From Hamiltosporidium tvaerminnensis FI-OER-3-3 (lineage: Eukaryota; Fungi; Microsporidia): a stretch of DNA of 64,000 bases. Positions 5,701 to 63,224 of this stretch are shown in pieces. The first letter of the stretch is position 1, and every line of letters starts with the position of its first letter. A program made the translations under genes and the position numbers. The notes below the pieces were generated by a model that was not told where the DNA came from, did no database searches, and was given only the letters and a program-made list of their open reading frames with translations. The DNA is taken from the NCBI GenBank assembly GCA_022605425.2, contig CM061256.1, forward strand, positions 612,573-676,572. Reading direction: 5' to 3'.

Positions 5701-5935
5701 GAACCAATACCCCCTTTAAAAGAAGCGAAAAGAGAGGAAGATGGTGTTAAAACTTTAAAACCAAAAAATAAAGCCCCCCTTATTTCACAAGGAGGAACCA
5801 CTTTGGAGGAACCGACCAATAACATAAATATAGAGTCGGATTTGGAAGAAGAGACAGTAGTGGTTAAAGAGGTAGAAGAAAACATATAAAAATAGTAAAA
5901 ATGGTTTAACCCAGAATTATATTAAATAAATATGA
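2790..5935 (+). mobile_element. 5'-truncated, decayed non-LTR retrotransposon with RT and restriction-like endonuclease (R4/Dong-like RLE clade)
   Basis: RT motifs: WKAAGIDG, DYRPITC, WIDVKKAYDS, ILQGDSLLPLLF, YKYLG. Also CxxC..H...C knuckle (CQHCGKSGKTVDHLATRC), RHNEV, RPDI, IEVG, EKLRKY. Lesions: frameshift near 2995, in-frame TAG at 3977-3979, FIDD mutated to FIHD plus a frameshift near 4190. Confidence 0.92.
4213..5889 (+). pseudogene. C-terminal RT thumb, zinc knuckle and RLE endonuclease of the R4-like element
   Basis: ORF track 558 aa containing YKYLG, the CCHC knuckle and RHN/PD-(D/E)xK motifs. Separated from the RT core by a frameshift. Confidence 0.85.
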
Positions 5936-43000: not shown

Positions 43001-43320
43001 ACCCAAATTATAGAAAATTTAATTTGAAAAATTGCATATGCGTATAAAATCTATAGTTGCAGAACTTTTAATGGATTTATATTTAGCTAAGCGCTCAGTT
43101 TAAAAACAAATTACAATAAATTGTAAAATCTATGTAGACATAAGTGTATACAATAAGTATTTTAGTGAAAAAGACGATCACATTTATCTAAATAGAAATT
43201 ACCTTATAAGAAACATAAACACCATTTGAGTATTCTGTACAGTTTTGGAAATAGCTATGAAACCAACTGAAAGCCATTTGATTTTAGAGATAAAGACTCA
43301 AGATAAGGTAAAGGGTTAGG

Positions 43321-46300
43321 AAGAAAGAATTTTATTTGTATAGTTCTAAAATTAAATAATCAGTTGAGATTTTTGGTATGAAAACAAAACCTAATTTAAG
43401 CAAATCAGGTAAATTAGTTTAAACAAAAATTTCTCAAATGATTAATAATTTCACATCTACCACTCACTAGAATACGAAACATCACTATTACACCGCCTCT
43501 TACAATATTTTTTGCATTCTTGGTGTTATTAATAGTACAAGCAAATTTAAAATACATTTCTTGTAAAAATAAGCACCCCCTCTCCTAATATTCATTTGCT
43601 CATTCGGGTAAATTAATTTAAAATATTTTTTTTCATCTGTAAAATTATATAAATAAGGCAGTAACGTCCCAGTGGGCTCCCCGCCTCGCCATTAGTGATA
43701 CGTTAGTAAATAGTTAGACCAATTTAATATTTTTGTGTTTTATTGTGTTTGGCCTGTGTTTGATCTTTGAAAGTCTGTTAAAATGATGTCAAGATTATCT
43801 TTTTCATGTATTGGACTGATAATTTCAAGAATGATTGAAAAACTGTTTTGTGTTTGTGCATTAAAATTGTAATTTTTGAGGATTTCATAATCCGAAAATA
43901 AGTTCTAGTTAATTTTTAAGTTTTTCTTTTTAAGTTTTTCATATCTTTTTTTGAAATTATCAGCTGTGAATTTTTGAATATTTTCCTAAGATTGTGTTTT
44001 AAATTCTTGATATTCTTTGTGTTATCTAAGTTCAAAAGTTTCTTGACAATTGTGTGTTTTAAGTTTTTAAACTTTGGGGCAATAGAAAATCTAGGTCTAT
44101 TTGATCGTCGAGTCCAATTTTCTATAGGGAATAGAGCATAGATAATTTTGGACGGTGTTTTAAAGAAGATTCTGAAGAGGTATTTGATAATTCCTTTTTG
44201 AATTCTATCAGCGGCCCCAAGGAAAGTTTTTTACAACCAAAATTCCTGTATGATAATCCAAATGAGGTCTTACATATGATTTAAATGCTCTCAACTTAAA
44301 CTTGTATTTGTTTTCTGAATTGAAATATCTTGTGAGCTTCATATTTTTGTTTATAATAGCAGTTGCTCTTATCGTTTTTTCTCTAATAATTTTAAGAGTT
44401 TTCCTAGTATCCACACATCTGTTATTAAAGTAAAATCCCAAATACTTTAAAGGATTTTGTCTTGTTATTTGTGGTTATATATAGAAATATTTATCTCTTT
44501 GCCAGAATTATAGTAGGATTTGTGTGGATTGAATACATAATTGTTGTGTTTGGCATGTTTACATCACACTTTATCATTTTTCTTACATGATTAATACTCT
44601 CAGAAAATAAAACAATATCATCTGCATATAGAAGAATATTTTTTCTCATAATTTTTTGTATAAAATGTATGATATCGTTAATGAAAATATTGAATAAACT
44701 CGGTGAAAGTATGCTTCCTTGAGGTAAACCAAGGGAAGCTGTTTTAATTTGACTTCTTTCTTTAGAGTTAGAGATCATATATTGGTTGTTTTCTATTGAT
44801 CCGGAATTAGAGTTGTGTCTTTTAGGGATAAGTTTTGATTTGACAACATTTTATGATACAATTCGGATCGATTAACGCTATCATAAGCTTTTATGAAGTC
44901 CAGTGTTACACATATAAGAGATCCATTTCCATGTCTTAATTCTGTTTCCAGAACCATAGCGTTATTGAGAGTAGAATATCCTGGTTTTAAACCAGATTGT
45001 TGTTTGTGAATTTTGAGATTTATTTGTGATAAAATTAATTCTTCAAATAATTTTCTGGTTTTTTCGATTGAAAAATTAGGTCTAAAATCATCAGTATCTT
45101 TAGGAATAGGAATTATTTTGTGAATTTTTCAAGAATCTGGTATCGTTTGTTCAATTATTATAAAATTATAAAGATTGTCAATTCTTGTGTAAAATTTAAA
45201 GGTAAAATTTTAGAAATTCATTTCTGATTCCAGAAATTCCACCAGATTTTCCCGTTTTTAAAGTTGCAATCTTTCCTATTACTTCGTTAGTTGTAAACCC
45301 GTTGATCTTATCTTCCAAATTAAAGTTTCTGTTGTTTTGTCGCTTGTTGTAAAAGTCAGTTATGTTTTCGACAGTTTTATCTGGGTTTATCAAGGGTCCG
45401 TCAAGTATAAATTTATTAATTAATTCATTCAAATTTGGGTTAATTTTTGATATTGGCAAACCATGGAACTTAATTACCTTCATAAACTCAGATGTATTTA
45501 ACCCGATATGATTTGGTTCTGAATTCGGAACATCTTTTTTATCAAATCTTTTCTTTAAAATTTTGATATCTTTTCCTAATTCATTGTGTAAATCTACGTT
45601 AGTGTGTCTAGCTTCTTAACATCATACCCTTAAGCTCTGGATTATAGGGGGAATTGCTTCAGCTCTACATGTTCTTATCTCAATTCTTTTCATAGTATAG
45701 CTTATAATATTGTGTAAAAATTTACAACATTTATTAATGCATATGTAATCTATGATAAAATATTTTTTTTTCTATATGGTTATGTATCTGTTTTGTAAGT
45801 GTATCTACTAAATCTTTATTTTTTAGTAGATTTAATTTGTATTTCGGCTTCTTAGTTTCACACAGTGCAATAGTATCAACAAGAGTTAGTTTATCGTTAA
45901 ATTCTTAGAGAAATTCATTTTAATTAAAATAAAGTAATTTGTAAATACTTTATCAGCTGTTGAAGATTTTGTGTTATGACAAACGTTGTAAAATTTAAGT
46001 TAATTTCATAAAGTCCGTATTACAGGTGATTATCAAGAATTTCTTGTTCAAGCGCCGGTTTTTGTTCTAAGTTGTAGTCTCCCATAATTAGTGTGTTTAG
46101 ATATTTGTAATTTATCAGATTTTGTTGTAGAATTTCAACTTTATTTGAAGAATTATTCCTTAGCTAAAGATAAATAAATTATATATGTGTTTTATTGTTA
46201 TTCCACTTTCCGTTATGTTGTCAATTTTTGTTAGGGTTAGATTTTTCGTAATCAGTATGATGGTTCCTTTTTTACGAGAGAATATGTAATCTACTCTTAT

Positions 46301-47513
46301 AGAAAGTTTAACAGCAGCGATTGCATACTTTTTTGAAATAGGTGTAAAAGTATCTCTCCACGTCTCAACCAAAGCAAGAATATCAAAGGTGTTTTTATCA
46401 AGAATTTCGTTAATCTTTTTAATTTTCAGATCAGATAGGCCGCCCACATGTAATGAAGCCTCTTTTCTTTACCATAATAATAAGAATGTGAGAGGAATCC
46501 CGGTATCTAGTCTTTACTAAACTTGTTGGTCTCAGGTTTAGAATTTCTCAGGATATCGAGCAGTATGGATTCCTTAGTAGTTATGTTTACTGCAGAATTT
46601 TTACATTTTATGTCAATGTTTTGTTCCTCTTTAAATCTTAAATCAGTTTTTGAGGTTGTTTTTTCATTATTTAATTTACCTTTTTGGTGTAATTTTCGTA
46701 AATTTATGAATTGTTTTGTTGAAAATTTTAAGATTAATTTTCTTGTTACATCTTTTATCTTTCTTATTAATATTTCAATAAATGTTTCCGCGTTTATGAA
46801 GTTCAGATTGTTGATGTAATTTTTGTGAGAATTTGATTTGTAAGAAATTGTCAATTTACCTTTTTTTTTATAAATTTGTTAAAATTTTTAAAAAATAGTT
46901 TCTATTAAATAAAGGTGTTTTGTCGGATTCGTAGGTAAAAGTTTTTTCATTTATGATTATGAAATTCCTCAAATATTTGTGTTTATGTTTAGGTCTCGTG
47001 CCTTTTTTGTGATCTAGTTCAGATTTTATGAATCTTTCGTTATTGACGTTCATGGCTGATGTTATGTTATTAACATGTTTGTGTGTTTTCTTCAATTTTT
47101 TGTTTTCAGATTTTGAAAATTTATATTTTCCAAATTTTTTGTGTTGGTTAGACAAAATATCTTCGGTGTCAATCACTGTTTTGTAATTAAAGTAATTAAT
47201 CTAATGTTTATGTGTTCCGAGGTTGTTAATTTTTGTTTTATCTCGGTTGGAGATAAAGTTAAAATTATTTTTTGTAATTTTTTCTGAATTTTCTGTCCAG
47301 GTAAGACATTTATGTTCTGATTTACTTTTTTTTGACTGAAATTATTTTGTCGAACAAATGTTGGTACGCATTCAAGACATTCTATATATCGTTGATTTCT
47401 TATTTTTGAATTATCCAAGAGTAAGTCTGATTGTATGTCTGTTGTTTTTGTTTTGTAATGTGTTCTTGTTCTAATGAAAAGTCAACCAAGTCTGAATAGG
47501 AAGAAATTGCCAT
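43321..47513 (-). mobile_element. Telomere-repeat-associated non-LTR retrotransposon A (full-length, ORF1 + APE-RT ORF2, pseudogenised)
   Basis: APE motifs DILALVETW and GDYN. RT motifs GKSGGISGIRNEFLK, LGLPQGSILSP, LLYADD, YVRPHLDY. 3' end abuts AGGGTTAGG (43312-43320). ORF1 ATG (47513) abuts GGGTTAGG (47514-47521). Many frameshifts and stops. Confidence 0.9.
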
Positions 47514-47521
47514 GGGTTAGG

Positions 47522-49815
47522 AAGAAAGAATTTTATTTATATAGTTTTAAAATTAATTTATCAGTTGGGATTTTAGGTATTAAAACAAAACCTAATTTAG
47601 GCAAATCTTTTTTTTTTTAAAAGGCACAAATTTATTTTAATATTTGAAGCACTAACTCCTCCTACTTTGTAATAATATATTCTTATTAAATTTCTCTTCA
47701 ATCAAATGAATAGTTTCTTCTGGAAACTTTCAATTATTGTATAATATTTCAGTCCAAAGTAACCTTCATTAAAAAACAAAAATTTTATCCAACGGTAGGC
47801 CTTTCCCTGTATATCACATGATATAAATAGGACATCTTCAATCTTCTTATAATTTGCAATAAATATCAAATCTTTTTCTGATATATTTATTTTCTCTAAC
47901 TCATTCTTTTTATTTTATATTCTTGTGAGGCACAAAATAATTCTGAAAAACTAATATTTTGAAAATAAATTCTAAGAATATGAATTTCTTTTAGATTCAA
48001 TAAATTACTAAATGCTTCTACATCTAAATTATCAATAAAAATTGCACACCTGTAAATCCTTTAGACTGCTTAGATCATAGTTTTGAAATAAAAACTTTAT
48101 GGAATCTATAACATATTCAGAATCCGAAATATCTTTATTCGTGGCTTTAAAATATAATTTCTATTATTTTCTGAAAGTTTTACGAAATCAATCATTTGAT
48201 TAATATTCCAAAGACGCAACTCTTTAATATAGAAAATTTGATCTACCGAACGGTTTAATTTTATAGTATTTGCTTTCTCAAAGTATATTTCTTGAAGACC
48301 CATCATAGGAGCAAATAATTATATTTATATATTTTTAAAGGTAATTAATCATCATGATATTTGATTAATGATTTTCCAGAAAAGGCAAATTGGATAAATT
48401 AATACAAACAAAAAATCATGATGATCATTTACTCTCATCCAACACTTTCTTAAAAATAACACTAATAAAAATTCACCCGCCTCTCATATAAATAGTTTCG
48501 CTCATCTGGGTTTTTATAATTGAAAATAACACCACCTCTACTATTTTCTTTTGCTTTTTTGGGATTTTAAGTATTAGAAAATTAGGCATTTTCGTACTCT
48601 GTATTAAAAATATCTAAATAAGGCGGTAATGTCCCATTCGGGCTCCTCGCCTTTGCGTTGGTGATAAGTTTTTGAACAGCTAGGCCAATTAACTGTTTTG
48701 TGTTTCAATGTGGGTTGCAGATATCATATCTTTGAAATTCGACGAGTATTTCGTCAAGATTATCTCTTTCATGATGTGGTCCGATAATTTCCAGGATTGT
48801 TGAAAAACTTTATTTTTATTGTGATTTAAAATTGTAAAATTTAAGTATTTCAAAGTCTGAAAATAGCTTTAAGTTAATTCTTAAATTTTCTTTTTTAAAT
48901 TTTTCACATTTTTTCTCGAGTTTATCGGCTTGAAATTGTCTATTTACTTTGTTGACAATTTTTTTAAAATGTTTGACATTTTTTGTGTTATCATTTTGAT
49001 ATAAGTGTTTGACAATTGAATTTTTGAGATTGCTGATTTTTGTTGCAATAGAGAATCTCAGTCTAGTGGATCTTTTAAACCAGTTTTCAATTGGGAAAAT
49101 GGCATACAATAATTTTGAAGGTGTTTTATAATAAATTCTGAATATATATTTTATAAGGTCTTTTTGAATTCTGTCTGCTGCCTCAATAAAAGTCTTGTTA
49201 CAACCTAAAAGTGAAGTGTGATAATCTAGGTGAGGTCTTAAATAGGCTTTGTAGGCTCTCAGTTTGAATTTATACTTGTTTTCAGAATTAAAATATTTTG
49301 TTAGTTTCATAGCCTTGTTAACTATGGCTGTTGCTTTGATTGTTTTTTCTCTAATTATTTTAAGTGTTTTTCATGTATCTACACATCTGTTATTAAAATG
49401 GAATCCCAAATATTTTAAAGGATTTTGTCTTTCAATTTGTGTGTTGTAGATTGATAGGTTAATTTCTTTGCCAGAATTGCAAAAACATTTTTTGGGATTC
49501 AAAATATAGTTGTTAAATTTCGCGTGTTTTGATACACATTTGATCATTTTTCGAATATAATCATATCTTTCAGAAAATATTACTATGTCATCAGCATATA
49601 GAAGTATGTTTTTTCTTATTTCTTCTGGAATAAAGTGAATGATATCGTTTATAAAGACGTTAAAAAGACTTGGTGAAAGTATGCTTCCCTGAGGAAGTCC
49701 CAAGGCTGCTGTTTTGATTTGGCTACATTCCTTAGAATTTGAAATCATATATTTGTTATTTTGAATTAGATTGGCAATAGGTGTTGTATCTTTGAGATAT
49801 AAGTTTTGATTTAAG
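47522..49815 (-). mobile_element. Element B: 5'-truncated copy of the A family (RT C-half plus 3'UTR), interrupted by a retrocopy
   Basis: GLPQGSILSP, LLYADD, LKYLG, YLRPHLDY. 3' terminus near-identical to A's. Truncated within RT and followed by AGGGTAGGGTTAGGGT (49816-49831). Confidence 0.9.
47607..48382 (-). pseudogene. Retroposed fragment of a host mRNA (LRR-like repeat gene family) inserted in element B's 3'UTR
   Basis: Poly(T)11 at the left end (poly(A) on the minus strand), 8-bp direct repeat AGGCAAAT at 47599-47606 and 48383-48390. B's 3'UTR resumes colinear with A after it. Minus-strand reading has LxEIyf / IKELRL / LKEIHI-type repeats. Confidence 0.7.
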
Positions 49816-49831
49816 AGGGTAGGGTTAGGGT

Positions 49832-51130
49832 GAAAAAGAAATGATTTATTTAAATACTTTTAGTAGATCAAAACAGATCTAAACACGTCACAACACAAAA
49901 ACAATTAACTTCTACGCTGATAATCTTGCCCCGCACATCACTAAAAACACCAACTACCTTCACGACTGATATTTTCGCCAGTTTCATTGATAATATCAAT
50001 GTCTCAAATCAATCACATGCATTTTTAATTGTTGTCTTAGCAATTAATTTGATAATCAAAGCAATTATTGGTTTCAAAAAGGGACCAATAATCGTAAAGT
50101 ATAATTTTGGATGGTTCTATACACTTCAATCTATTTTATAAAAGCATTACAAAGGCTACTACGTCCCCTAATGGGGCTCTGTGCCCAACCGTTTCTGCAA
50201 AATCGTATCTGCTAATGTCGACTGGCCAATGTCAACATACTTTTATGGTGGATTTTATTTTTTTGTCGTTCATAAGTTCTAAAATTTCTTCAAACTTTTT
50301 CTTTTTCTTTTCAAAGTTAACTACCTCTAATAGTTTACTTAATCTTTCTTTAGTTTCTGTATTCCAGTTAAAATTTTTTAGGTTTTTAAAATTGTTAAAT
50401 ATTTCTAAGTTCTGTTGTAAATTTTTCTTCTTAGGTTTAGTAATTGTAGCTGAAAATTTTATTGTTGTTCCTTGGACCATCTCTTCATTTATATGTTCAA
50501 AGTAAAGTTTCTTCATGGTTTTAAAGATTTTAGTATTGTTATTTAGGAAGTTCGTGTATAAATTTGTTCTTTTACCATTCAGAATCTTGTGAGTGTTAAT
50601 TAAGCTTAGTCGTCTACTTCTTTGCTTTTTTTTTCTATAGAGAAGATTCCGTAAATGATTTTACTCGGTGTTTTGTAATATATTCCAAAAAGATTTTTAA
50701 TAATTCCTTTTTGGATTCTGTCGCAATCTTCAGTGAAAGTTTTGTTTAGACCAAGAAGTGTAATAGGGTAATCTATATGTGGTCTTACATATGATATGTA
50801 GCCACGTAGCATGTATCTAAAAATGTCACCCGAGTTATTAAATATATTCTTTCTTACAGCACTTTTTAAAATCGCTGTAGCTTTTAGGGCATTTGTTCTA
50901 GCTATTTTAAGATTTTTCTTTGTATCTGCGCATTTCAAATTGAAATAATAGCCTAGGTATTTGATTGGCGATTGTTTAACTATTTCTATATTATTAACTC
51001 TAATTTCAATCGTAATATTTGTGTTATAAAAACATTTTTTCGCGTTTAACAGATAGCTATTGTATTTGGCGTGTCTTTCTATGTTAGCTATCATTTCATG
51101 GATTTCATCTATTCTGTTCGAAAATATCAA
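49832..51130 (-). mobile_element. Element C: 5'-truncated, diverged lineage of the same retroelement group
   Basis: IKYLGYYFN, YVRPHIDY, DRIQKGII. Truncated just after the YADD position. Bounded by telomeric remnants at 49816-49831 and 51130-51138. Carries the shared 3'UTR hairpin. Confidence 0.88.
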
Positions 51131-52378
51131 GGGTTAGGAAAAGGAAATTTTATTTAAATATTTTTAAGTTCTGAAAAATTTCAGAATTTACATACAGTTA
51201 ACACCCCCCTCCTGGTATGATACATGACACCCGTTACTACAGTTTCATCTAACCCTTATACTTCCACGAAGCCTCATATGGAATTCCTTGAGGTTCCAGA
51301 TTGTCTTGTTTCATGGGTATCTTCTCAACCTGATCTGCTTTATAATATTAACTGGTAAAAGTTTTTTAAATATGGCAGTAACGTCCCTTGCGGGCTCCCT
51401 GCCTTAACCTACCTGCTAAATAGTATCTTGTGGATTAATAAGGTCAATATTAACCCCGCTAAGTTGTGTGATCTTTATTATGCTGAATAAATTTTATTAA
51501 AATTTGAATTATATTTTCTCTTTTATAGTCTGGAGTAAGAATATCTAAAAAAGCTTTAAATCTTGTTGTTGGAATCCTTTTGAAATCTTGCTGCCTTAGA
51601 TTCTCGAAAGAGTTAAAGATTTGGAAGTTAAGACGCAAATTTTCTCTTTGCCACCTATTATATTTTGCTTTAAATTCATTTCCCTGAATCTTATTCTTGA
51701 TATACTTGCAATTTTTCTTTATATCTTTAATATTTTTGGATTTATTCGGTTTGAATATCCATCTTAACAGTGTTTTTCTTGTGTGTATGATCTTATAAGC
51801 AACATTGCTCCTGAGTCTATCTGCTCTTTGCTTTGTATTTTCCAAGGGAAATAATGCGTATAAGATCTTCGTTGGCGTTTTGAATAAATTTTATATAGAT
51901 ATTTTATTATGCCTTTTTGTATCCTATCAGTGCCTTCAACAAACGGTTCATTACAACCGAACAGCTGGGCATAATAATCTATATGGGGGCGTAATAATTT
52001 AGTATACATTCTTAATTTTGATTGATAATATTGCAGGTTATTATTACTATATTGTGTCTTTCTTAATAACTTATTTGTAATCACTGCCGCTCTAACGGCT
52101 TTTTGCCTTATGAATTTAAGGCTTTTCATGGTACCTGCACATTTATTGTTAAAATAATATCCTAAATATTCCAGAGGGACTTGTTTTTCCAACCTGGTAC
52201 GATCTACATAGAAATCGTGATCTGTTGAAGCATTGTAAAAACATTTCCTTGGGTTTAATTTATATCTGTTGGCTTCCGCGTGCGATTGACATTGATCTAT
52301 CATGTATTGCATTGTGCTATGCCGTAAGCTAAATAATGAAATGTCGTCTGCGTAAATAATTATGTATGGTACCAGGTG

Positions 52379-54205
52379 CTATGGCATTCTTATCACGATA
52401 TCATCAATAAACACATTAAATAAAATTGAAGATAAAATGCTTCCTTGGGGTAATCCAAGAGCAGCAGTTTTCCAATTATTATTTTCTATTAATGTGTTGA
52501 TCTTGTACTCGTTATTCTCGATCAGTGCAGCTATTAGAATTGTATCTTCTCTTGAAAACTTCTTCTTTATCATTAGTTTCTCGTACAACCTCTTACGATA
52601 TACACTGTCATAGGCTTTGGAGATATCTAAAGTTACACAGATTCCTTCTACATCGCCATGTCTTAATCTGGTGTCAAGTGTTAAGGCGTGGTTAAGGGTC
52701 GAATGCTTCAGTCTAAAACCAGCTTGTTGTCTTTTCAGCTTTACCTCAAATTTGCTAAAAATTAGTTTTTCGAATAGTTTACGTGTTTTCTCTATCAATG
52801 AAATAGGTCTAAACTCGCTATCATCTTTGTGTATTGGTTGTATCATGTGTTTCTTCCAAATCAAAGGAATCTCTTTATCCGTAATAATCTTGTTAAACAT
52901 GTATGTAAGCTCCACTATAAAGTTGCGCAGACAAATCTTAAGGAATTCATTCTTAATACCGCTAATCCCACCCGCTTTGCCACCTTTTAATATCTTTATA
53001 CATTTCTCTACCTCTTCAACACTTAGCTGGTTTATCTTATTTTTTCTCTGTATGGTGTGTTTGCTAAATAAACTATTGTGGATGTTTTTTATCCACTTAA
53101 TTGTTTCCTCTAAGCTTGTTATCTTCCGATCTAAAACAAAGTTATTAAGTAATTCTTTATTATAATTCTGTCTACTGTTTGGGATTGCGTTACCATGAAA
53201 ATTCATAATGGCTTCTAATTGTGATGCTTCCAAACCAATGTGTTCTACTTTGAGGTCACGAGTATCAGTATCCGGTAGGTTTTTGGTTAATCTCTTTACT
53301 TCTTTACATAACCTTTCAAACAAGATTGGATTATTGTGCCTTGCTCTTTCAAGTGCTCTCCTAATGTGCTGAATGACTGGATTGAAGTTCGTACGACTTT
53401 GTTTGCGTATTATGAGTCTATATACACCAGAAAGTATGATATTATGTAAAGCTGTGCAACAGTCATTGATGTTTAGAGTTCTTATAATATTCGAATTCTT
53501 CTTAATTAAAATCTCTATTTTATTTGTAATATTTGCTACTACTTTTGGTCTAGTCAAGAGTCTTATATTATACTTAGTTTTCTTTTTTTGTATTTCTATC
53601 GGTTTTAATATTAAGAGTTTGTGATTTAATCCCACAATTGGAGAAATCTTAATATCTACTATCGTGTTTGTAAAAATCTTATCAGGTTTTGATTCTTTAT
53701 TATTGTGTTTGTATGTATTTGTTAGAATGTCGATCTCTGACAATCCATACATTGCGTGGTTATCTAAAATTTGTTGTTCAAGTGTCTTGTGTTGTTCTGA
53801 GTTATATTCTCCTAAAATGTATAGTCTTTTGTACAGGTATTGGTTTAATGTAGGTTTTACGATGTTAAATTCTGTACTTTTTGGGGGTCTATATATAAAA
53901 ATAAAAATTTGGTCATTCACTTTTATTGAAATACCTTCATCTGTTATATTGTCAATTGCCTCACTAACAATCGTATCCCTACCCAATACTATTATACCTT
54001 CTTTGTTTGAGTATCGGTCTCTTACTTGGACAGATTTCTTACTGTTTAACACTTTATATCCTCTTAAGAGTGGCGTTATATTATCTCTCCATGTTTCAGC
54101 CACTCCGAGGATGTCCAACATATGTCCTTGAATTAAATTATTTATCTTAAAAATTCTATTATCAGATAATCCCCCAACATTGATATACCCTACTTTAAAA
54201 ATCAT
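52379..54205 (-). pseudogene. APE endonuclease plus RT N-half of element D ORF2
   Basis: 608-aa ORF, frameshifted just before YADD. Continues in 51764-52312 and 51459-51845. Confidence 0.9.
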
Positions 54206-54274
54206 AGAGTTTATTGTTCAAGCTCGAAGTGTAATCTATCTAAATATTATTGTCCTTGATATTGAGAATTTTTA

Positions 54275-55764
54275 TCATCTCGTGAGTTTGATGCCTTTAC
54301 TCTTGAGTATACGAACTGCTAGACTTCTTAGTTTGTCGTTCTTGTTGCCCTGTCTGTCTTTAATCTTCTTCATTCGTGTAAATAACTTGCTTATTTTAAA
54401 AAGACCATTACTATCTACTTCAGGCGAGTTAATCAAGTGTTTGGCTCCAAGCATTCTAAAAATTCTAATCACCTCCTTTTGCACAGACCCTTTGCATATC
54501 ACTTCTAACACAGTATTAGAGAGAAACTCCATGTTTACAACCAACTTACTAGCACCCGGTTGAATGTTCTCCAAAGCGAGCCGAAATAGTGATATTTTAT
54601 TAGAAGTTAAATTACAAAGTAAAGTAAAACGTGTCTAGCATATGTAAAAGGTGATTTACCTTGTGTTAAATGCGCAAGATGCTCAGCAGTTAGTTTAATT
54701 GGGCTGGACTTCTGCTTCATATATTCTTTCTTCTTTAGAATATTGTTTCTTACTGAGATGGCTACCTCAGATTTGTCACTTATAGTCTCCTTGATATCTG
54801 CTTGGTAATTTATTTTCTTTACTTGATCTTCTCCTATTTCACTATTTGTTGTTTCCAAACTTCGTTTCCTATAGGGTTTCTCAATTTTTTGAATGTGAGT
54901 CAAGCTTCAAGGTTTATCTTCAAGCCTTAATGAGATACTTTTCTGTTGCTTTGCCACGTCCGTACCACCTCTGAGCGTGTTCTGTTTCGGGACTGTACGT
55001 ATAAGAACTCTGACTCTGGGTCTTGATAGTATCTTACGTGTGGTTTTATTGCCGTTGCTAGTGAGCGTATTGTTGATGTGTGTAATCTGTGTTGTTTCAT
55101 AGAGTGTTGTGGTATCAGAATTCGTGTTCTTGTTATCAGTAGCATCAGTCATCTCATTTACCACGTTTGCATTATTATCTTTTGTTGAAGATGTATCTTC
55201 TGTTTCTATCCTATCGAAATCCTTACCTTTTTTCAAATGTGCGTTTTCAATAGCAGAGGGTAAAACATTTTTCCCTTCTCTTGATTTTTGAAAAATATTA
55301 TCTTGGGTGTTATTTGTATGACCAGAAAGAAAAGAAGAGGTATCAGCTTTAGGATTGATGATGGTATTTCTTTTTTGACATGTTGTTAAGTTTGTGCTGT
55401 GTAACGAGACTGTCTGTTCATGCGGCGTATCACCAAGGTCTCTACCCCGTACCCTTGGTTTAACAGCTTGAACGATCCGCGATACTTCCGTTGTGTTCAA
55501 TTCATTATTTCGTTTAGTTTGTTTCTTACTAGTACAACGAGTCTTGTTTGTAAATTCCGCACATAGATCTGAAGTTCTTGTAGATGTCTTATCTAGGTGC
55601 AAATTAGAGTTTCTAGCCATGTTCCAAAAGCCATTGCAAAGTAGTTGAACAGTTTCGTTTTCTGTATTTGTTCTGTCTCTTAGTGTATTTCTCTGTGCAA
55701 CTTTATTATGAGTTGGATCTTTTGTATTTTTATCAGAATGAGCTAAGGAATATTTTGTAGCCAT
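54275..55764 (-). pseudogene. ORF1 of element D (disordered Thr/Asn-rich N-terminus, folded alpha/beta C-terminal domain)
   Basis: ORFs 54907-55764 and 54607-54903 share a frame separated by one stop, then a frameshift to 54275-54574 (VLLYF...RLALE...VNMEFLSNTVLEVI). Confidence 0.7.
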
Positions 55765-55772
55765 GAGTTAAG

Positions 55773-55850
55773 ACAAGAAAATTTTATTTAAACATTTTAA
55801 AAATTCTGGAAATTTCTATACTACCTCAATTAAACCCCATCAAACAATTA
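55773..55850 (-). mobile_element. Element E: 3'-terminal relic of a D-like element; right boundary undetermined
   Basis: acaagaaaattttatttaaacattttaaaaattctggaaatttc matches D's terminus aaaaggaaattttatttaaatatttttaagttctgaaaaatttc. Confidence 0.65.
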
Positions 55851-58800
55851 GAAAACTTTAGAATATTAACCAGATCTTTTTGCACTATTGTTAATAACAC
55901 ACGCCTATAACACTGTATAGAGCTTAACATCTTTTGAATAACAACAACAGAATTAATACCCTTAACTACAAGTAGCACGATAACACAGATAGTGCTTGTC
56001 TTGTATATGACACACTCCTTTACTGTATCACTACAGTTAGCAGGACGAACTATTTGATCCGTATGGAAATTAGCGCACTATTTGCATAAGCCTTATTAGA
56101 TTATACAGAAGGGTTTTTAAAGATAGCTTATGAACAGAATTTCAAACTTAATATTTTTCAGTAAGAACTGTGGGATAAGTAAAATAAAGTTCAAATTGTT
56201 CATAAACATTTATACAATTTGCTTTACTGACTGACATAACGTGTTTAGCTTCAATGTTTTAATTCCTTTCGTGTATCGCTCAAATGAAAAGTTTTCATCT
56301 TAAATTACAATTTTTTTTTTCGCAATCAGGCTCATTAAATAAGATTGACATTAACACAGATTATGGCTGAATGGATTATATATTAGACTTTTAAAATTGA
56401 ATATAATCCCTTGTTTGAGCGAATCCGTATTTTTCACGAGATTAAACAATTTATTTATACTACTCTATGAATATTATCTAGAATTTTGCAAATAATCCTA
56501 TATTAGAATTTTCCGAAATCATATCACCTAACAACCTAAAGTTTGAAATAAATATTCAGCGAATATCATAAAAATAGATATATAGGTGGTATTTGATATA
56601 AGGCTTAAATGAAAATATAGGAAAACAGAGTTATAAAAGAGTATACAAAATACTACCCAATGACAGAAGAGCTTTAAGACATAGAAATATGAAATGTTTT
56701 TATAGAGGAGATGTTCGAGATTAAGAACGTACGCTAATTTATAGTTTTTAATATAATAAATATAAATTGGTAAAATCAAAGAAAAAAATAGCCCCTGTCA
56801 TCCTGATAATATAAATAAATATCTTACCCTTTTGAAATCATTGTATCTGGCATATGCTCTAATATAATAGACCACACAGATCTATTTTTAGCTTATAAAC
56901 AAACCTTCTCTATAAAAATACTTGGGAAAACTAAAACTACTCTAATCATTTCTTAATAAACTGACCAAATTTTTCTATATGTCTGTATAAATTTAGGTTG
57001 TATATGAAAATGTATATTATATACATTCCAAAAACAGGTGTAAGTACTGATTTTTAGTAGAAAGTATTTCTAAATCCCCTGTTGAAGATACCTATTTTAA
57101 TTCACAGTTAAACAGTATATACTTGCTTTGATCTGGAAAATACATCTATTCTAATTACAAAAAAAACCCTTGTATGATATTGAGTATAGTAAATAGAAAT
57201 ACGTTAACCAAGTACATACGAAGAACTTCTAATATTCACTGTGTTGAATAGAAAGCATACTTAATTTTATTATATAATTAGAAACGATACCGAAAAGTAT
57301 TAACGATATTTCTTTCAACCCTATCAATTCTAAAATTACTACGTTCTTAAAAAATACATAAGCCTAATTTTATAAAAAAGTGTTTTTGAATTACTAGTAG
57401 GCTCGATCGTCTGAAAAAAAAGTATGAAAAGTGTACAAACCACATAAAATCTTTTTAGATCAGTCTGGCGTTTTCTTTAAGATTAAAATCTATATAAAGT
57501 TAATAGTATTTTCTTAAATTAGAAAATACATACAAATTAAGTCAATTAAAAAATACTTTGTTTCTTTTTCGTTTTTTTAAAAAAAATATTAATCGCTAAA
57601 ACAATTTCTTTAAATTTTTTTCTACAATATTCTAACGATTAGAATTATCGATGTTTTTTTGCTATCTGTCTACACAAAATGCATAATATATTTTTAACCT
57701 CTGAACCTACATATTTATCAAATATAAGTGGCAAAGAAGGGAGAAATTTTACTTACTCAATCTAATGTTTTAAACAAGCTATTCTTAAATAAAAGTTTCA
57801 AACCTAGATCCAAGACAGGTTAAACTTATAATTTACTAGGTTTTCTTAGCATTTTCTTTTTCAAGTAAACTATAGGAGCATATAAAATAATCACCTTTTA
57901 ATATATTTCAAAAAAAAATTAGCCAATGATAAAACGAATTCTCTCAAAACACTTATATCTTTAAAGAAATCATAGAACTGACTGTTTTGATATATTCTCT
58001 AACTGAATAATAGACATAAAAAGTAATATTATATAAAACGAAAAATTTACTTCCTAATTGTGATTAAATAGCTAAAAACATGCACCTCCGAAGTTTAGAA
58101 TTAATCAACCATAATTTTAAGATAAACCCCCTAATCATAAACGTACTTTCAAATTTTTTATTTTTGTAAATTACTAAAAAATAAAAAAAAAATAACCTGA
58201 TGCATATTTCCTAAAAAACTATTAACATGAGTGTTGCTCAAAATTCGGTATTTTCATAACGAAAAAAAACAATTTGTCTTCATTTTAAATGTACTTTTTT
58301 ACGACTAAAAACTCTTCTGAAAATTTTCAATTTCTTAATTTGAATATAATTTGCGAAGGTAACACATAAATTCAGAATGAAATATGCTAAGGTGCTATAT
58401 CACTTTAGTAATTTGTTTGAAAAGTTAAATTTGTACGTTTAATAGATTCTTTCAAACAAATTTGAACTTAATATTTTCGGCTTGGCAATATTTTTTTTAA
58501 TTTAGAAAGTAATTATTATTCAAAGAAAGTCGTATATTTATCAAAAATCTTAATTTTCTCACAAAAAAAGCTAGAATTTTGCACATAGTAGGTAGAAGTA
58601 GAAAGAATAAGACAATTTATAGATATTATAAAGCCCTGGTATATATATTTATCATAAACGGATACATAAAAATAGTAGACAATTTTAAACATTGTAATAA
58701 AATTATAGAGGTAAAAATTTTAATAAATATAAATATACAATTACATTTAAATTTATACAGTACTAAACCAAACCACAGGAAGGTAAAAAATATATAACTG

Positions 58801-61199
58801 ACTAAAAAATTTGCAATGAATTGTAAAAAGTTATAGAATACTAAAACGGAACAAAATATTTTGAATTTGTCCAAAGAATTCCAGGGAATCTAACCCTAAC
58901 TTTATACGGTTTTTGAAAACGCAATTTTTCAAAAAAAGTATGTAGAAAAATTCACTTTTTAGTAAAATGTAGACAAAAATAAAACAATATAAACAATCGG
59001 AACTTTCATAGTTACAAATTTTCAAAAAAGTCATTATCAAATTTAAATTGTTTTTAATATTTAAATATTTTCAGATAGAATAAAGGTATTTTTATTCTCA
59101 AATATGTAATTGATCCAAACCCCTTCAGGGGTGGGTGATCACTCTAAGAGATAATCCGAATAAAATCAAATTTCAAGACCAGAACTAAAAACTGAAAGAA
59201 AAAGAAAAGTGATGCCCGTTTTTATTCTGACTAATACACCAATAAACTTTTTACTATTCGTTTTTTTACCCCAACCTACTTACTTCCCTCTATCACTATT
59301 TCTGAAAAATGTACCTTGAAAATGTATCTCTCATACCATAATACTATTCCAATTCATCACATTCTTTTCCCTGTATTATTTCAGACCAACTATTTTATAA
59401 ACATTACCTAGACTTCAGAATCTCTTTATCATGATTCATCTTTAAAGAAGGATTACCAAACATACTAAAAATAATTAACTAAACCAATTAAGTTAGAGTT
59501 TAAATTATTTTTTTGGTTTTGGCTAGCATGGAATGGCAAGTTTAATTAATTCCGTGACAATCCAATTCAAATTTACATATTAAATTTTTCTTCGTAACAA
59601 TTTTCTTTATTTTTTTCTTATTTTATATATTACTTTTCTTCCCAATTTAGAAGAGATTCTTATAAAACATTTTTTTGTTTATTTTATCTACTATATGTCA
59701 ATTCACGTTTTTAGAACATTTTTGGGGCTTACATTCCCTAACTTCACAAAAGGTAAATTATTACAAAAAGAAATTTAAATATATTATTAGATTAATATGA
59801 TTCTAAGAAGCCTTTTCAAATCTAAATTTGTGTATTTTCATAGTTATAGAATCTAAGAAAAAATATATTTTTGAAGAAGTAAATTTACTAGCAATATAAA
59901 TTTTGATATATAAAAACTTTAAGTGGAAAAATATTGGTTAGCAAAGATTAAAATACGGTTATTACTTGGATAAAAATTACAGGAAACTACTTTTTATAAA
60001 AAAACAAACATGGTTTCATACCGGTGGATAAGGAAAAATAGAAACTTAACTTTTGGATAAGAGAATCATTTTTTTTAAATAATTTCTATTTTTTTACCCC
60101 AATTTATTTTTCAATAAGAATAAAAAAGTTTGGGAGAAGAAAATAATGCAAGAAAAAAAAGATTGTAGTTAAAAACAAAAAAAATTATTGGAGAAAAAAA
60201 GTTAAGAATAAATCGTGAGAGTAAAATTAGAGTAGAGATGAGCATTGGGTTTTACATCTATTAAGAAAGTTTTAGTTAGGGAAAGAAAAATTGTAGCTAC
60301 GGAAAAAAGATTTTAGCTAGGGAACAGGTATACGAAGGAAGAAAATTAGGTATGTGAAAAGAGAATTAGTTGGTAATAGGGTTTAGGGAAAGTGAAATCA
60401 GGCCGGGGGAAAGGATTTCTAAGGAAAAAGTATTGTTTTTTAAAATTTAAAAAATACTAAGGAAAGTTAAAATTGGTAGAATAAGAATCTGTTAATTAGA
60501 AAAAAATTGTCAGAATGATAATATTTAGTTGAAATTAATAGAGTCGGGCATGTTATTAAAATTTGTTTTAAAGATACAAGTTTTAAAAAAAGAAAATAAT
60601 TTGAACAGAATAAATAAAAATTACTTTTGTAAAGAAGAATTGTCCTGAAGGGAAACAAGTTTATGGAAAAAAGAAAGTTAGGGCAAAAGAAATTAATTGC
60701 GGAAAAAATAAATTTAAAGATAAAATGATTTGGCCAGAAAAATGATGAAGTTATTTAAAATATATTTAAATATAAAGAAATTAGGGGGTGAGATTCTGTT
60801 ATGTAAAAAGAAATCAGGGTAAAAACAATTGGGATAGGGAAATAATAATAGGGTCGAAGAAAAACGTTTGGTTTTGGGGGATTAAAAAAAGGGAGGGAAA
60901 GCTTGTTAGGAGTGGTATGAAATTAATTAGTTGAGTGAAAAAAGTTTTTGCTATTTTTTAAAAAGAGTTTGGTTTTTAGAAGTATTTGATTCTGCATATG
61001 CTCAATAAAATATTGTTGAGCAACAGTTTAAAAATTCTGATTGCGGTTAATTGAAAAAGGTATGTCTAATTACAAATAAATTTCTTCTTTCATTAATATT
61101 CAGCTGCTTTTAATTTTTTTTTAATTTTTGTTTGAGGAATTCTTTTTTAAAACATAAATATATTTGGTTCCAAGGTATTAAGAGTAGTTTTCACTGGCA

Positions 61200-62900
61200 A
61201 TAGTTATGGAATCTGCTAAATTCAAATTATTACATGTAAAAAATCATTTGCTATTAGGACAAAGTTTTTTTTAAATTTCAGATGAATAAATTCAATACTT
61301 ACTTTTTATAGTTGAAAATTTATTTTAATTAAAAATATTAAAAGCAATACATTTACAAGCGTTTTATTTTTATATTCAAAAGAAATGTCGCTATTTCATG
61401 CATAAGGGTTTTCAATGTTAAATCAATGTATGAATTTTTACTTACTTTTATAAAAGCAAAAAAATCATGAAAAACTTTTAAAAAAAGCGATTTCAATGGG
61501 CATTAAGGTATATCTTTATTCTATTTCTATTTATTGTAGATTCGTACTAAATGAAAAACTAAAATTTTCTAAAATCGACCAAAAAATAAAGACTTTTAAT
61601 TTACTTGGAGAAAAATGAAAGGCTTAATGCAAATCACTCAAATGCAAGTTAAAATTAAAAATAAAAAAGTTAATATATTTGGAAAATGTAATAGCACTTA
61701 ATACCATTCCAATTAAAATATTTTGCTTTCACTAACCTAAGTCAGGGAAATACTTGGGAAATATAGTAGAGAAAATATTATTTACCTAACCTGTAGCAGT
61801 GAAATACTTGAGAAAGTAAGTTTTTTAAAACATTAAAGAAATATGAGGTTTGATTAACATTACAATGTCCTTACTTAAGTTCTGTAACATAGCTAGCAAC
61901 AAAGTATGTAAAACCTTTAGAAAAATAAAACGAACACATTTATTTAAATAGAAATGTAAATACACAAGAACCTACACATATGCAAAATATTATAAAAGAC
62001 ATATTATTTTTGATTGTGACCGAATTAAAGCACTTAAAAGCATACAATCAAAATTGTAAGATATTGTAAATAATAAATTAAGGTTGTTCGTAAGATGATT
62101 TAAAATTTTTTTGAACAGTATTTTGATATAATTTTATTATATAGGGTATATTTCTTCAAACAACTTTTCTATCTAAATAGGCAGTGTTATCCTAGTATTT
62201 GGCTCATTACCTTAAAGTTCCTGTAAATACAATTGATGTTGCAGTTAAGATTATCTAAACGCATTACAAGATTGTTAAAATCACTAATTTCAAATTTTTC
62301 GATTTTTCAACAAGAACGAATGTGATTTGAGATAGCTATACAATTAATCATGTTTAGACCCATGGGGATAAACATTAATAAATCTTTCTATAATCCACCA
62401 ATTAGGATATATACAGATGCAGCAAATATAGCTGCAAATATTACAGAGAATTCATATCCGTGAACGGTGGCATTTGTTATATTTGGCTTCCACTTCATTG
62501 CAGTCATAGCTCTTGTAGTTTTAAAGATGAAGAGCTTTTCCTATAGAGCATCAGATGTTTCAAACATATTCTTGAACCTAATCGTAGAAGATGCTACAAA
62601 ATGAAAAACCCTTGCCTTTTATACTTGTGAATTTTTTTACAATCAATGTCACTTGAATCAAATTTCATTTAATTCGTTCAGTATCTTGATAGATATTTTT
62701 CCAAAGCAATCAATCCAGTTACAATATGAATTAGCTCAAGCCACAATTGTTAATTATAAAATCCACTGTTTACCCTTCTATTCCATTTTAAAGTATAACA
62801 ATACACATTTAAATTATGTTCTTGGCTTCTTTTAAATCATACTAAAATATTCTATAAGTATATCCCTACATATATAATTTTCTTCATATTCTATTTCATA
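61200..62900 (-). pseudogene. Possible decayed polytopic membrane transporter gene (ABCG/ABC-2-like TM region)
   Basis: Minus-strand fragments such as EFSVIFAAIFAASVYILIGG and YFVASYVTEL (ABCG 'YFLAK..EL'-like), broken by stops. Confidence 0.3.
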
Positions 62901-63224
62901 TCTGAATTTATTACTTGCATAAATTTAAATAAAAAAAAATTATAAAAATAGCTGTAAAATAAATTAATTTCAAACCATGTATTATCTAAAAAATCTATTG
63001 TTTAATACGTATAGAGATATATTTAAAATAATTGCTACATGAGTTCTGCTAAATTATTATTAATAATATAAAAAAACATAAAAATCTTTATTTGTTAAGC
63101 TGCATATCATTTGACCAAAGTTTTATTTTTAACAAATTCACTTAAACCAGAAAAGCTTTGTATAAGCGAATATGTATCCACGTAAATTTTTTATTCTTTA
63201 TTGTAAATTGTGTACATGAGAAAA

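What the first reader, a model, noticed from the sequence alone, without database searches (positions are those of the whole stretch)
43312..55850. Head-to-tail array of telomere-repeat-targeting APE-RT retrotransposons, each junction sealed by a GGGTTAGG remnant
Seen: five elements (A-E) are stacked in one orientation, 3' ends toward the centromere. Junctions read AGGGTTAGG|aagaaagaattttattt (43312), GGGTTAGG|aagaaagaattttattt (47514), AGGGTAGGGTTAGGGT|gaaaaagaaatgatttattt (49816), AGGGTTAGG|aaaaggaaattttattt (51130) and degenerate GAGTTAAG|acaagaaaattttattt (55765). The remnants have the same polarity as the real telomere 7.4 kb away. B and C are 5'-truncated inside RT and run straight into the repeat. 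At least three diverged lineages (A/B, C, D/E) share this behaviour. Known analogues are TRAS/SART (APE, insect TTAGG), HeT-A/TART, Giardia Gil elements, Magnaporthe MoTeR and bdelloid Athena. I know of no described equivalent in microsporidia, but cannot search. Inference: either repeated endonuclease-directed insertion into TTAGGG with target duplication, or cycles of end attachment, erosion and telomerase healing.
Basis: partly seen in the sequence, partly recalled or inferred. Interest (0 to 1): 0.92.

Follow-up and report, generated by a model that had tools for sequence, protein, structure and literature searches.

The report
Telomere-repeat-joined LINE arrays in a microsporidian
Near a chromosome end of the Daphnia parasite Hamiltosporidium tvaerminnensis, a family of jumping genes is stacked head to tail, nearly every copy joined at its tail to a few bases of telomere repeat, a telomere-directed lifestyle known from silkworm, fruit fly and rotifer elements that I did not find described for microsporidia.

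Summary
The window is a chromosome end of Hamiltosporidium tvaerminnensis, with (TTAGGG)n at 63225-64000. Between about 43.17 and 56.0 kb at least seven non-LTR retrotransposon units lie on the minus strand, 5' ends toward the telomere.

The same array is present in an independent assembly.

Across 13 further loci from H. tvaerminnensis and H. magnivora, about 14 element 3' ends abut 6-18 nt of C-strand telomere repeat, almost always in one register. None has a poly(A) tail. Five old ends keep 0-4 nt.

Full-length copies start with the ORF1 ATG directly after the remnant. ORF2 has an RT domain and a divergent endonuclease that Pfam misses; a structure model and conserved catalytic motifs support it.

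All copies form one clade with at least six deep lineages. A sister element ends in (TTC)n instead.

Best reading: a telomere-repeat-primed LINE clade. Whether the primer is an endonuclease nick or an eroded chromosome end is unresolved. It is a new variant of a known kind.

The parts
43168..43311 (-). Z: ~140-nt 5'-truncated 3' fragment of an F-type element. It forms the proximal flank of A.
   Evidence: Aligns with the F-type termini of window ~61945-62060 and L001 590-720.
43312..43320 (+). Telomere remnant AGGGTTAGG at the 3' end of A.
43321..47513 (-). Element A: full length but heavily decayed. 3'UTR with hairpin motif at 43657-43685; ORF2 remains at 43752-46465 (endonuclease plus RT); ORF1 remains up to the ATG at 47511-47513.
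   Evidence: tblastn map; frame scan; hairpin model.
47514..47521 (+). Remnant GGGTTAGG between the ATG of A and the 3' end of B1.
47522..48305 (-). B1: 5'-truncated, 3'UTR-only fragment. Its last 86 nt are 91% identical to the A terminus.
48306..48309 (+). Short remnant TAGG at the 3' end of B2.
   Evidence: sequence.
48310..49815 (-). B2: element 5'-truncated inside RT, with hairpin at 48622-48651. 93% amino-acid identity to the H. magnivora protein P0036.
49816..49831 (+). 16-nt imperfect remnant AGGGTAGGGTTAGGGT.
49832..51129 (-). Element C: 5'-truncated inside RT, with hairpin at 50154-50185. A separate lineage, 93% to P0037.
51131..51138 (+). Remnant GGGTTAGG at the 3' end of D.
51139..55764 (-). 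Element D: full length and nearly intact. 3'UTR at 51139-51461 with hairpin at 51374-51403. ORF2 at 51462-54205 (endonuclease about 53530-54205, RT about 51767-52830), with one in-frame stop and one frameshift. ORF1 at 54278-55764, with one in-frame stop and one frameshift; its ATG is at 55762-55764.
55765..55772 (+). Degenerate remnant GAGTTAAG. The same junction reads CTTAACCC (element sense) in L013.
55773..56020 (-). E: 3'-terminal fragment of a D-related element; its upper limit is uncertain. It travels with D in three loci.
56374..56526 (-). Decayed piece similar to an F-type 3' region.
   Evidence: blastn to L001 248-404, 71% identity.
61945..62250 (-). F: decayed 3' fragment with hairpin motif at 62180-62211 and no clear remnant.
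63225..64000 (+). Terminal (TTAGGG)n tract, with two irregular units at 63447 and 63868-63875.

Best explanation
These are members of one Hamiltosporidium clade of non-LTR (LINE) retrotransposons that specialise on telomere repeats. Each encodes ORF1 and an ORF2 with an N-terminal APE-type endonuclease and an RT.

Shown:
- New copies are joined by their 3' end to the G-rich telomere strand in a fixed register. The primer ends in ...TTAGG, and the cDNA starts with the complement of the pyrimidine-rich terminus that follows an AATAAA.
- There is no poly(A).
- Copies always point with the 5' end toward the chromosome end.
- Both 5'-truncated and full-length copies are followed directly by the next remnant and the next element.

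Inferred mechanism: target-primed reverse transcription from a G-strand 3'-OH inside a short telomeric tract. The transcript probably reads a few bases into the downstream remnant (the AATAAA lies 10-12 nt before the element end), so it could pair with that strand.

I lean slightly towards a nick made by the element's own endonuclease at TTAGG^G (about 0.45) over priming from the natural 3' end of an eroded telomere (about 0.40).

Further inference: the element has no 5' leader. The preceding element's A/T-rich terminus plus the CCC of the remnant may therefore act as the promoter of the next copy.
For: - RT and endonuclease.
- Junctions with 6-18 nt of C-strand repeat: window A, B1, C, D, E; L003 and L013 (CCTAACC); L007/L004/L005 (CCTAAC[C/T]C); L006 (CCTAACTC); L008 (17 nt); L009 (CCTAACCC then ATG); L011 (CCTAAC then ATG, and CCTAAC x3); L012 (CCTAGCC, CCTAACCC); L001 (CCCTAA).
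- No copy has a poly(A) tail.
- Upstream neighbour: wherever the sequence 5' of an element is identifiable (window A, B1, B2, C, D; L001, L003/L013, L008, L009, L011, L012), it is another clade member in the same orientation. The 5' limits of E and F are undefined.
- Host genes lie on the 3' side of the arrays in the window, L001/L013, L004, L011 and L012.
- All Hamiltosporidium copies form one clade (support 100) with at least six deep lineages.
- A sister metagenome element ends in (TTC)n with no telomere repeat, so the trait is specific to this clade.
- Endonuclease motifs are conserved across lineages.
- The array is reproduced in another assembly.
- For the promoter idea: microsporidian genes have 5'UTRs under 7 nt, with an A/T-rich signal and a CCC motif just before the ATG (PMC2803860). 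In A, D, L009, L011 and L013 the ATG directly follows the remnant.
Against: - Only one real chromosome end was seen. There the array is 7.4 kb from the tract, and no element is embedded in or directly capped by the terminal repeats.
- Remnants are very short (3-18 nt). SART1 needs at least three repeats (PMC7265360).
- Five old junctions have 0-4 nt of remnant: B2, L008 upstream, L012 8331, F and Z.
- The D-type copies are partly not independent. The E+D block, and in L007 12 kb of subtelomere, is shared between loci, so some of the different flanks arose by recombination at the remnant rather than by new insertions.
- Every window copy is a pseudogene. No empty site, transcript or polymorphic insertion was available.
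- The last catalytic Asp of the endonuclease (SDH motif) is Asn in most copies.
Confidence: 0.8

Rival explanations
1. End attachment without a nick. The element RNA pairs with the G-overhang of a critically short or broken chromosome end and is copied onto it. Telomerase then adds a few repeats to the new end, and the cycle repeats, as proposed for HeT-A/TART and Athena.
For: - Uniform polarity of the arrays.
- 5'-truncated copies are capped by a remnant and then by the next element.
- Remnants are very short, variable and sometimes imperfect (16-nt AGGGTAGGGTTAGGGT; 3-18 nt overall).
- The E-D-subtelomere block is attached to three different proximal sequences exactly at the remnant, as expected if short ends are rescued by copying from an interstitial repeat.
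- The window's own tract begins where the H. magnivora paralogue continues for 1.6 kb, i.e. a healed truncation.
Against: - The endonuclease is conserved with its catalytic motifs over at least six deep lineages.
- The array is not ordered by apparent age. The distal units E and F are the most decayed, and 7.4 kb of other DNA lies between the array and the tract.
- No element touches the terminal tract in this window.
Confidence: 0.4
2. The telomere-like bases are part of the element itself: a (CCCTAA)-like 3' tail made by the RT in place of poly(A). The elements have no telomere specificity, and arrays arise because copies insert into one another's tails.
For: - The length varies like a microsatellite tail (3-18 nt).
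- The sister element ends in (TTC)n.
- The variant CCTAACTC recurs in several D-type copies.
- Several copies abut sequence that is not recognisably element-derived, after only 8 nt of repeat.
Against: - Every array seen has the polarity expected for the nearest chromosome end or for the gene-poor contig edge.
- Wherever the 5' side is identifiable it is another clade member. No isolated copy inside ordinary sequence was found.
- The C/T variant is polymorphic at one and the same locus (L007 against L004/L005), so it is decay, not inheritance.
Confidence: 0.12
3. The array owes nothing to retrotransposition. It is the product of tandem or segmental duplication and recombination of subtelomeric DNA, or of mis-assembly, and the short telomere-like strings are chance.
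For: Subtelomeric blocks are clearly copied between ends. The window and L007 share 12 kb at 92%. L007 and L004/L005 share 6 kb at 93%.
Against: - Neighbouring units belong to different lineages (65-74% nucleotide identity) and are truncated at different points, so they are not tandem duplicates.
- GGGTTAGG is tenfold over chance and sits exactly at element termini.
- The same structure is found in a second assembly and a second species.
Confidence: 0.03

Closest known systems
TRAS1 / SART1 of Bombyx mori (APE-type LINEs, R1 clade, specific for TTAGG repeats)
   Same: ORF1 plus ORF2 with an N-terminal APE endonuclease and an RT. Insertion is at a fixed position and orientation in the telomere repeat, and several lineages share the target. 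The endonuclease model matches the TRAS1 endonuclease 1WDU among the top structural hits.
   Different: TRAS and SART carry poly(A) tails, and SART1 needs a long one and at least three repeats (PMC7265360). From my own knowledge they sit inside long repeat tracts. Here there is no poly(A), only 3-18 nt of repeat and direct head-to-tail stacking. R1-clade membership was not tested.
HeT-A / TART / TAHRE of Drosophila
   Same: Head-to-tail arrays with the 3' end toward the centromere and frequent 5' truncation. The leaderless 5' end here suggests a promoter in the upstream neighbour, as in HeT-A (an inference).
   Different: Drosophila has no telomerase repeats, and its junctions are oligo(A). 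Here telomerase-type repeats cap the chromosome and mark the junctions.
Athena / Coprina Penelope-like elements (bdelloid rotifers, fungi and others)
   Same: From my own knowledge, they form head-to-tail stacks in which truncated copies are capped by a few telomere repeats, followed by the next element's 3' end. Athena is listed as telomere-associated in PMC10088271.
   Different: They are Penelope-like RTs without an endonuclease. The elements here are LINEs with a conserved APE domain.
MoTeR / FoTeR / Cnl1 (fungal telomere-associated non-LTR elements, CRE clade)
   Same: Telomere-associated non-LTR elements in the fungal lineage.
   Different: They carry a restriction-enzyme-like endonuclease and cluster with CRE/SLACS (PMC12857005). 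The elements here have an APE domain, and no such domain was found after the RT.
Tx1-1_ACar (anole), Zepp (Chlorella), GilM/GilT (Giardia)
   Same: Other telomere-associated LINE-like elements listed in PMC10088271. According to that paper Tx1-1_ACar also inserts into telomeric repeats.
   Different: Unrelated hosts.

Membership tests
APE-type non-LTR (LINE) retrotransposon | Reverse transcriptase domain of the LINE type | tested here: met
   RVT_1 at E 3e-15 in D and E 1e-32 to 4e-36 in intact relatives.
APE-type non-LTR (LINE) retrotransposon | N-terminal apurinic/apyrimidinic-like endonuclease | tested here: met
   Pfam and single-sequence PDB searches are blind to it. The AlphaFold model (pLDDT 84) matches L1, R1 and TRAS1 endonucleases at E about 1e-9. 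The motifs N, E, Y, GDxN and PDK are conserved; SDH reads xNH. Caveat: the alignment used for the model included true APE domains.
APE-type non-LTR (LINE) retrotransposon | No long terminal repeats; variable 5' truncation | tested here: met
   No terminal direct repeats in A or D. B1, B2, C and Z are truncated at different points.
APE-type non-LTR (LINE) retrotransposon | Poly(A) or simple-repeat 3' tail | tested here: not met
   No A-run at any 3' end. The ends are pyrimidine-rich and are followed by telomere repeat.
TRAS/SART (R1 clade) | Fixed insertion register and orientation in telomere repeats | tested here: met
   About 11 junctions begin CCTAAC directly after the element's last T. All have telomere polarity.
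TRAS/SART (R1 clade) | RT phylogeny inside the R1 clade | not testable with these tools
   No named reference sequences could be fetched. The tree has only unnamed outgroups plus Rhizopus, Orpinomyces and some animals.
TRAS/SART (R1 clade) | ORF1 with CCHC zinc knuckles; poly(A) tail | tested here: not met
   No CCHC pattern and no Pfam hit in five ORF1 translations. No poly(A).
HeT-A/TART type terminal elements | Added to chromosome ends in place of telomerase repeats | tested here: not met
   The chromosome ends in 776 nt of (TTAGGG)n, and the junctions carry telomerase-type repeats.
HeT-A/TART type terminal elements | Promoter in the 3' end of the upstream element | tested here: inconclusive
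   The ATG abuts the remnant in five copies, and the junction resembles the microsporidian A/T-rich plus CCC start signal. No transcript data were available.
Penelope-like Athena/Coprina | Penelope-type RT without an endonuclease | tested here: not met
   An APE domain is present and conserved.
MoTeR/FoTeR/Cnl1 (CRE clade) | Restriction-enzyme-like endonuclease C-terminal to the RT | tested here: not met
   No Pfam domain in the region after the RT. The endonuclease is N-terminal and of APE type.

The most novel reading that the evidence does not exclude
Hamiltosporidium keeps, alongside telomerase, a retrotransposon-based system at its chromosome ends. A whole clade of LINEs is added only at short telomere tracts. 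Each junction (the upstream element's A/T-rich terminus plus the CCC of the telomere remnant) is the promoter of the next, leaderless element. The interstitial remnants serve as the points where whole chromosome-end blocks are copied from one end to another. This would be a HeT-A-like arrangement evolved independently in a telomerase-positive parasite.
Probability: 0.25. Interest if true: 0.8.

Novelty: new variant of a known kind. Interest (0 to 1): 0.62.

Why it matters
Telomere-specialised retrotransposons are known from a handful of unrelated hosts. They are the main evidence for the idea that retroelements and telomere maintenance repeatedly co-opt one another.

A microsporidian example would add an independent origin with several useful properties:
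- It uses an APE endonuclease, whereas the known fungal cases use a restriction-like one.
- It sits in a tiny, sequenced, telomerase-positive genome.
- Its sister lineage ends in (TTC)n instead, so the change of target can be dated and dissected.

It also matters for annotation. GenBank gene models in these contigs fuse ORF1 with ORF2 or span two elements. The genome papers searched here describe the chromosome ends without these elements.

Finally, the short remnants mark where subtelomeric blocks are exchanged between ends. This bears on how large microsporidian genomes expand.

Tried and rejected
- Pfam and single-sequence PDB searches do not see the endonuclease. It needed a profile and a fold model.
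- Rfam has nothing in 43-64 kb.
- The conserved 30-nt 3'UTR motif folds as a hairpin, but its covariation is not significant: 2 compensatory pairs, and the shuffles are not exceeded. I call it a conserved motif, not a proven structure.
- A CCTAACCC at L003 6242 looked like a junction, but it is internal to a long 3'UTR. L001 has CCCGCCC at the same position.
- TTAGGGTTAG inside A (about 46231) lies in a continuous endonuclease-coding match and is chance.
- The telomere-like string at 15790 is coding and chance.
- A possible terminus at about 37.47 kb is only an AT-rich match.
- A fixed 8-bp target-site duplication is rejected as a general rule, because remnants are 3-18 nt long.
- The metagenome scan gave only distant LINEs (at most 34% identity), none with the 3'UTR motif.
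- tblastn finds no LINE coding remains in 55.8-63.2 kb or 30-43.3 kb.
- An RT phylogeny against named clades (R1/TRAS, Jockey, Tad, L1/Tx1) could not be built, because no reference sequences were obtainable by reference.
- The 3' end of the P0007-type element was not found. Its 3'UTR exceeds 1.5 kb and contains internal repeats.
Full report
**What the window is.** The best protein hit of the longest ORF in the region is 99% identical to a Hamiltosporidium tvaerminnensis protein, and all close relatives are from H. tvaerminnensis or H. magnivora. The window is AT-rich. It ends in 776 nt of (TTAGGG)n from 63225, the repeat reported for this species (PMC10542269). Large host-type ORFs stop at about 30 kb. 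The window is therefore a chromosome end with about 33 kb of gene-poor subtelomere.

**The observation.**
- Outside the terminal tract GGGTTAGG occurs five times, all on the + strand, against 0.5 expected. Four are the junctions. The fifth (15790) lies in a GA-rich coding region.
- A pattern joining the remnant to the element terminus matches only at 43314, 47515, 51132 and, degenerate, 55766.
- In this window the terminus never occurs without the remnant.
- tblastn with family proteins puts all coding remains on the minus strand. A and D run from endonuclease to RT. B starts at about residue 515 of the 913-aa relative P0007, and C at about residue 593.
- The same D-C-B-A array, at 99.8-100% identity, is in contig PITJ01000028 of an earlier assembly. 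It is not an artefact of this assembly.

**Refinements to the anatomy.**
A second A-type 3' terminus at 48310 aligns over about 100 nt with the A and B1 termini. It lies at the right distance from its 3'UTR motif. Only TAGG remains as remnant.
- The supposedly unique flank of A is a ~140-nt 3' fragment (Z) of another lineage.
- E is only a 3' fragment.
- Further decayed pieces in the same orientation lie at 56374-56526 and about 61945-62250 (F).
- At least seven stacked units, and nine pieces in all, are on the minus strand.

**What the elements are.**
- D has ORF1 (no Pfam hit and no CCHC knuckle) and ORF2. ORF2 has RVT_1. Each ORF is broken by one in-frame stop and one frameshift.
- There are no terminal repeats.
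- Pfam does not detect an endonuclease, and a single-sequence PDB search finds nothing.
- Alignment with distant APE-bearing LINEs shows the catalytic N, E, Y, GDxN and D motifs.
- An AlphaFold model (pLDDT 84, pTM 0.82) matches L1, R1 and TRAS1 endonucleases at E about 1e-9. The alignment behind that model contained true APE domains, which is a caveat.
- Across six Hamiltosporidium lineages and the sister clade the motifs are conserved. GEYN in the window's D is a private change. The SDH motif reads INH in most copies, IDH in one lineage and TEH in the sister clade. The endonuclease is thus under selection.
- A 30-nt motif, GGCAG..GAGCCC-loop-GGGAC..CTGCC, lies in every 3'UTR about 200-330 nt before the end. 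A covariance model finds it in all family members. It finds no hit in 400 kb of distant LINE loci. Rfam has no match anywhere in 43-64 kb. Covariation is weak.

**How general the telomere junction is.** I fetched thirteen contigs of four draft assemblies of the two species plus one metagenome relative. The 3' junctions, in element sense, are:

| Locus | Remnant | What follows |
|---|---|---|
| L003 and L013 | CCTAACC | 5' end of a P0007-type element |
| L007 / L004 / L005 | CCTAAC[C/T]C | one shared flank |
| L006 | CCTAACTC | another flank |
| L008 | 17 nt of repeat | a flank |
| L009 | CCTAACCC | ATG of a full-length element |
| L011 | CCTAAC | ATG of a full-length element |
| L011 | CCTAAC x3 | a flank |
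| L012 | CCTAGCC | a truncated element |
| L012 | CCTAACCC | a flank |
| L001 | CCCTAA | a truncated element |
| L013 | CTTAACCC | at the E-D junction |

Sources for the table.

- No end has poly(A).
- Every end has AATAAA 10-12 nt before the terminus.
- Five old junctions keep 0-4 nt: B2, L008 upstream, L012 8331, F and Z.
- Wherever the sequence 5' of an element is identifiable, it is another clade member in the same orientation. The 5' limits of E and F are undefined.
- Host genes, where present, lie on the 3' side.
- An RT tree puts all Hamiltosporidium copies in one clade (support 100) with at least six deep lineages. The window's B2, C and D fall in three of them.
- The nearest outgroup is a set of metagenome elements. 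One of these (L010) carries the 3'UTR motif but ends in (TTC)6 with no telomere repeat.

**Not all junctions are independent.**
- The window from 63224 down to D's remnant is collinear at 92% with H. magnivora contig L007.
- L007 shares D plus its different 3' flank at 93% with L004/L005.
- The E-D pair also heads L013.
- So a block (subtelomere, E, D) has been copied between ends. The homology breaks exactly at D's 3' remnant.
- Either short telomeric ends were extended by copying from an interstitial remnant, or recombination occurred there.
- L007 also continues 1.6 kb beyond the point where the window's telomere begins. The window's end therefore looks truncated and healed.

**Mechanism.** Shown: attachment of the element's 3' end to the G-strand in a fixed register, uniform polarity, 5' truncation and absence of poly(A). 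Inferred: target-primed reverse transcription from a G-strand 3'-OH, with the transcript reading a few bases into the downstream remnant.
- For an endonuclease nick: the conserved endonuclease, and the lack of age order in the array.
- For priming from eroded natural ends: the very short, variable, sometimes imperfect remnants; the block copying at remnants; and the fact that SART1 needs three repeats.
- I cannot separate the two variants with one chromosome end and draft contigs.
- A fixed 8-bp target duplication is not supported.

**Promoter idea.** Full-length copies start at the ATG directly after the remnant (A, D, L009, L011, L013). Microsporidian genes have 5'UTRs under 7 nt, with an A/T-rich signal and a CCC motif just before the ATG (PMC2803860). 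Two of seven host ORFs in the window show CCC near the ATG. The conserved TTTAAATAAA of the upstream terminus plus the CCC of the remnant may therefore drive the next element. This is an inference only.

**Literature.** The two Hamiltosporidium genome papers report the repeat unit and rDNA-associated LINEs but no telomeric elements. A T2T paper on Microsporidia sp. MB notes LINEs next to the telomeres without junction analysis. A 2023 survey of telomere-associated retrotransposons lists insects, Giardia, Chlorella, Pyricularia, anole and rotifers, and no microsporidia. The fungal cases belong to the CRE clade with a restriction-like endonuclease. Searches for microsporidian telomere-specific elements found nothing relevant.

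**Verdict.** This is a new, independently evolved variant of the known class of telomere-specific non-LTR retrotransposons. It is of solid interest to specialists in transposons and telomeres. The nick-versus-end question and the promoter idea remain open.

Noticed in passing
window 43657-43685, 48622-48651, 50154-50185, 51374-51403, 62180-62211 (minus strand): A conserved 30-nt 3'UTR motif that can form a 5-bp stem, an internal loop and a 4-bp stem with a tetraloop. It is present in every lineage and in the sister clade, absent from 400 kb of distant LINE loci, and has no Rfam match in 43-64 kb. It may be the RT recognition site.
   Followed up: partly
window 51130-63224 versus L007 1610-13732; L004, L005, L013: The block subtelomere-E-D is shared at about 92% between chromosome-end loci, but the sequence after D's 3' remnant differs in each. 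Homology breaks exactly at the 8-nt telomere remnant.
   Followed up: partly
window 63224/63225 versus L007 1-1609: The H. magnivora paralogue continues for 1.6 kb of non-telomeric sequence where the window's telomere tract starts. This chromosome end therefore looks truncated and healed.
   Followed up: no
window 58888-58898: An 11-nt telomere-like string (CTAACCCTAAC) with the opposite polarity to the terminal tract. It is not next to any recognisable element terminus.
   Followed up: no
window 63447 and 63868-63875: Two irregular units in the terminal tract: an extra G, and TTAGAGGG.
   Followed up: no
window 3113-5889 (+): A different RT-bearing element (RVT_1, 25-30% identity to this family). 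Part of it recurs at 97.6% in L007 15819-16148, so it is a dispersed repeat.
   Followed up: partly
L010 (metagenome contig ERZ25039592 contig_21960): The sister-clade element has intact ORF1 (486 aa) and ORF2 (923 aa) and a 3' end of AATAAA followed by (TTC)6. It is flanked by 44-bp tandem repeats. The host organism is unknown.
   Followed up: no
L001 4600-6176, L003 6020-7437: The P0007-type element has a 3'UTR longer than 1.5 kb with ~160-nt internal repeats. Its 3' end was not found.
   Followed up: partly
L009, L011, L012, L013: The GenBank gene models P0006, P0035, P0047 and P0050 join ORF1 to ORF2 with invented introns or span two neighbouring elements.
   Followed up: partly
L011 ORF1 (from 489) and L010 ORF1 (4669-6129): These ORF1 proteins have a Cys-rich C-x2-C ... 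C-x2-C stretch that is missing from the D-type and L009-type ORF1.
   Followed up: no
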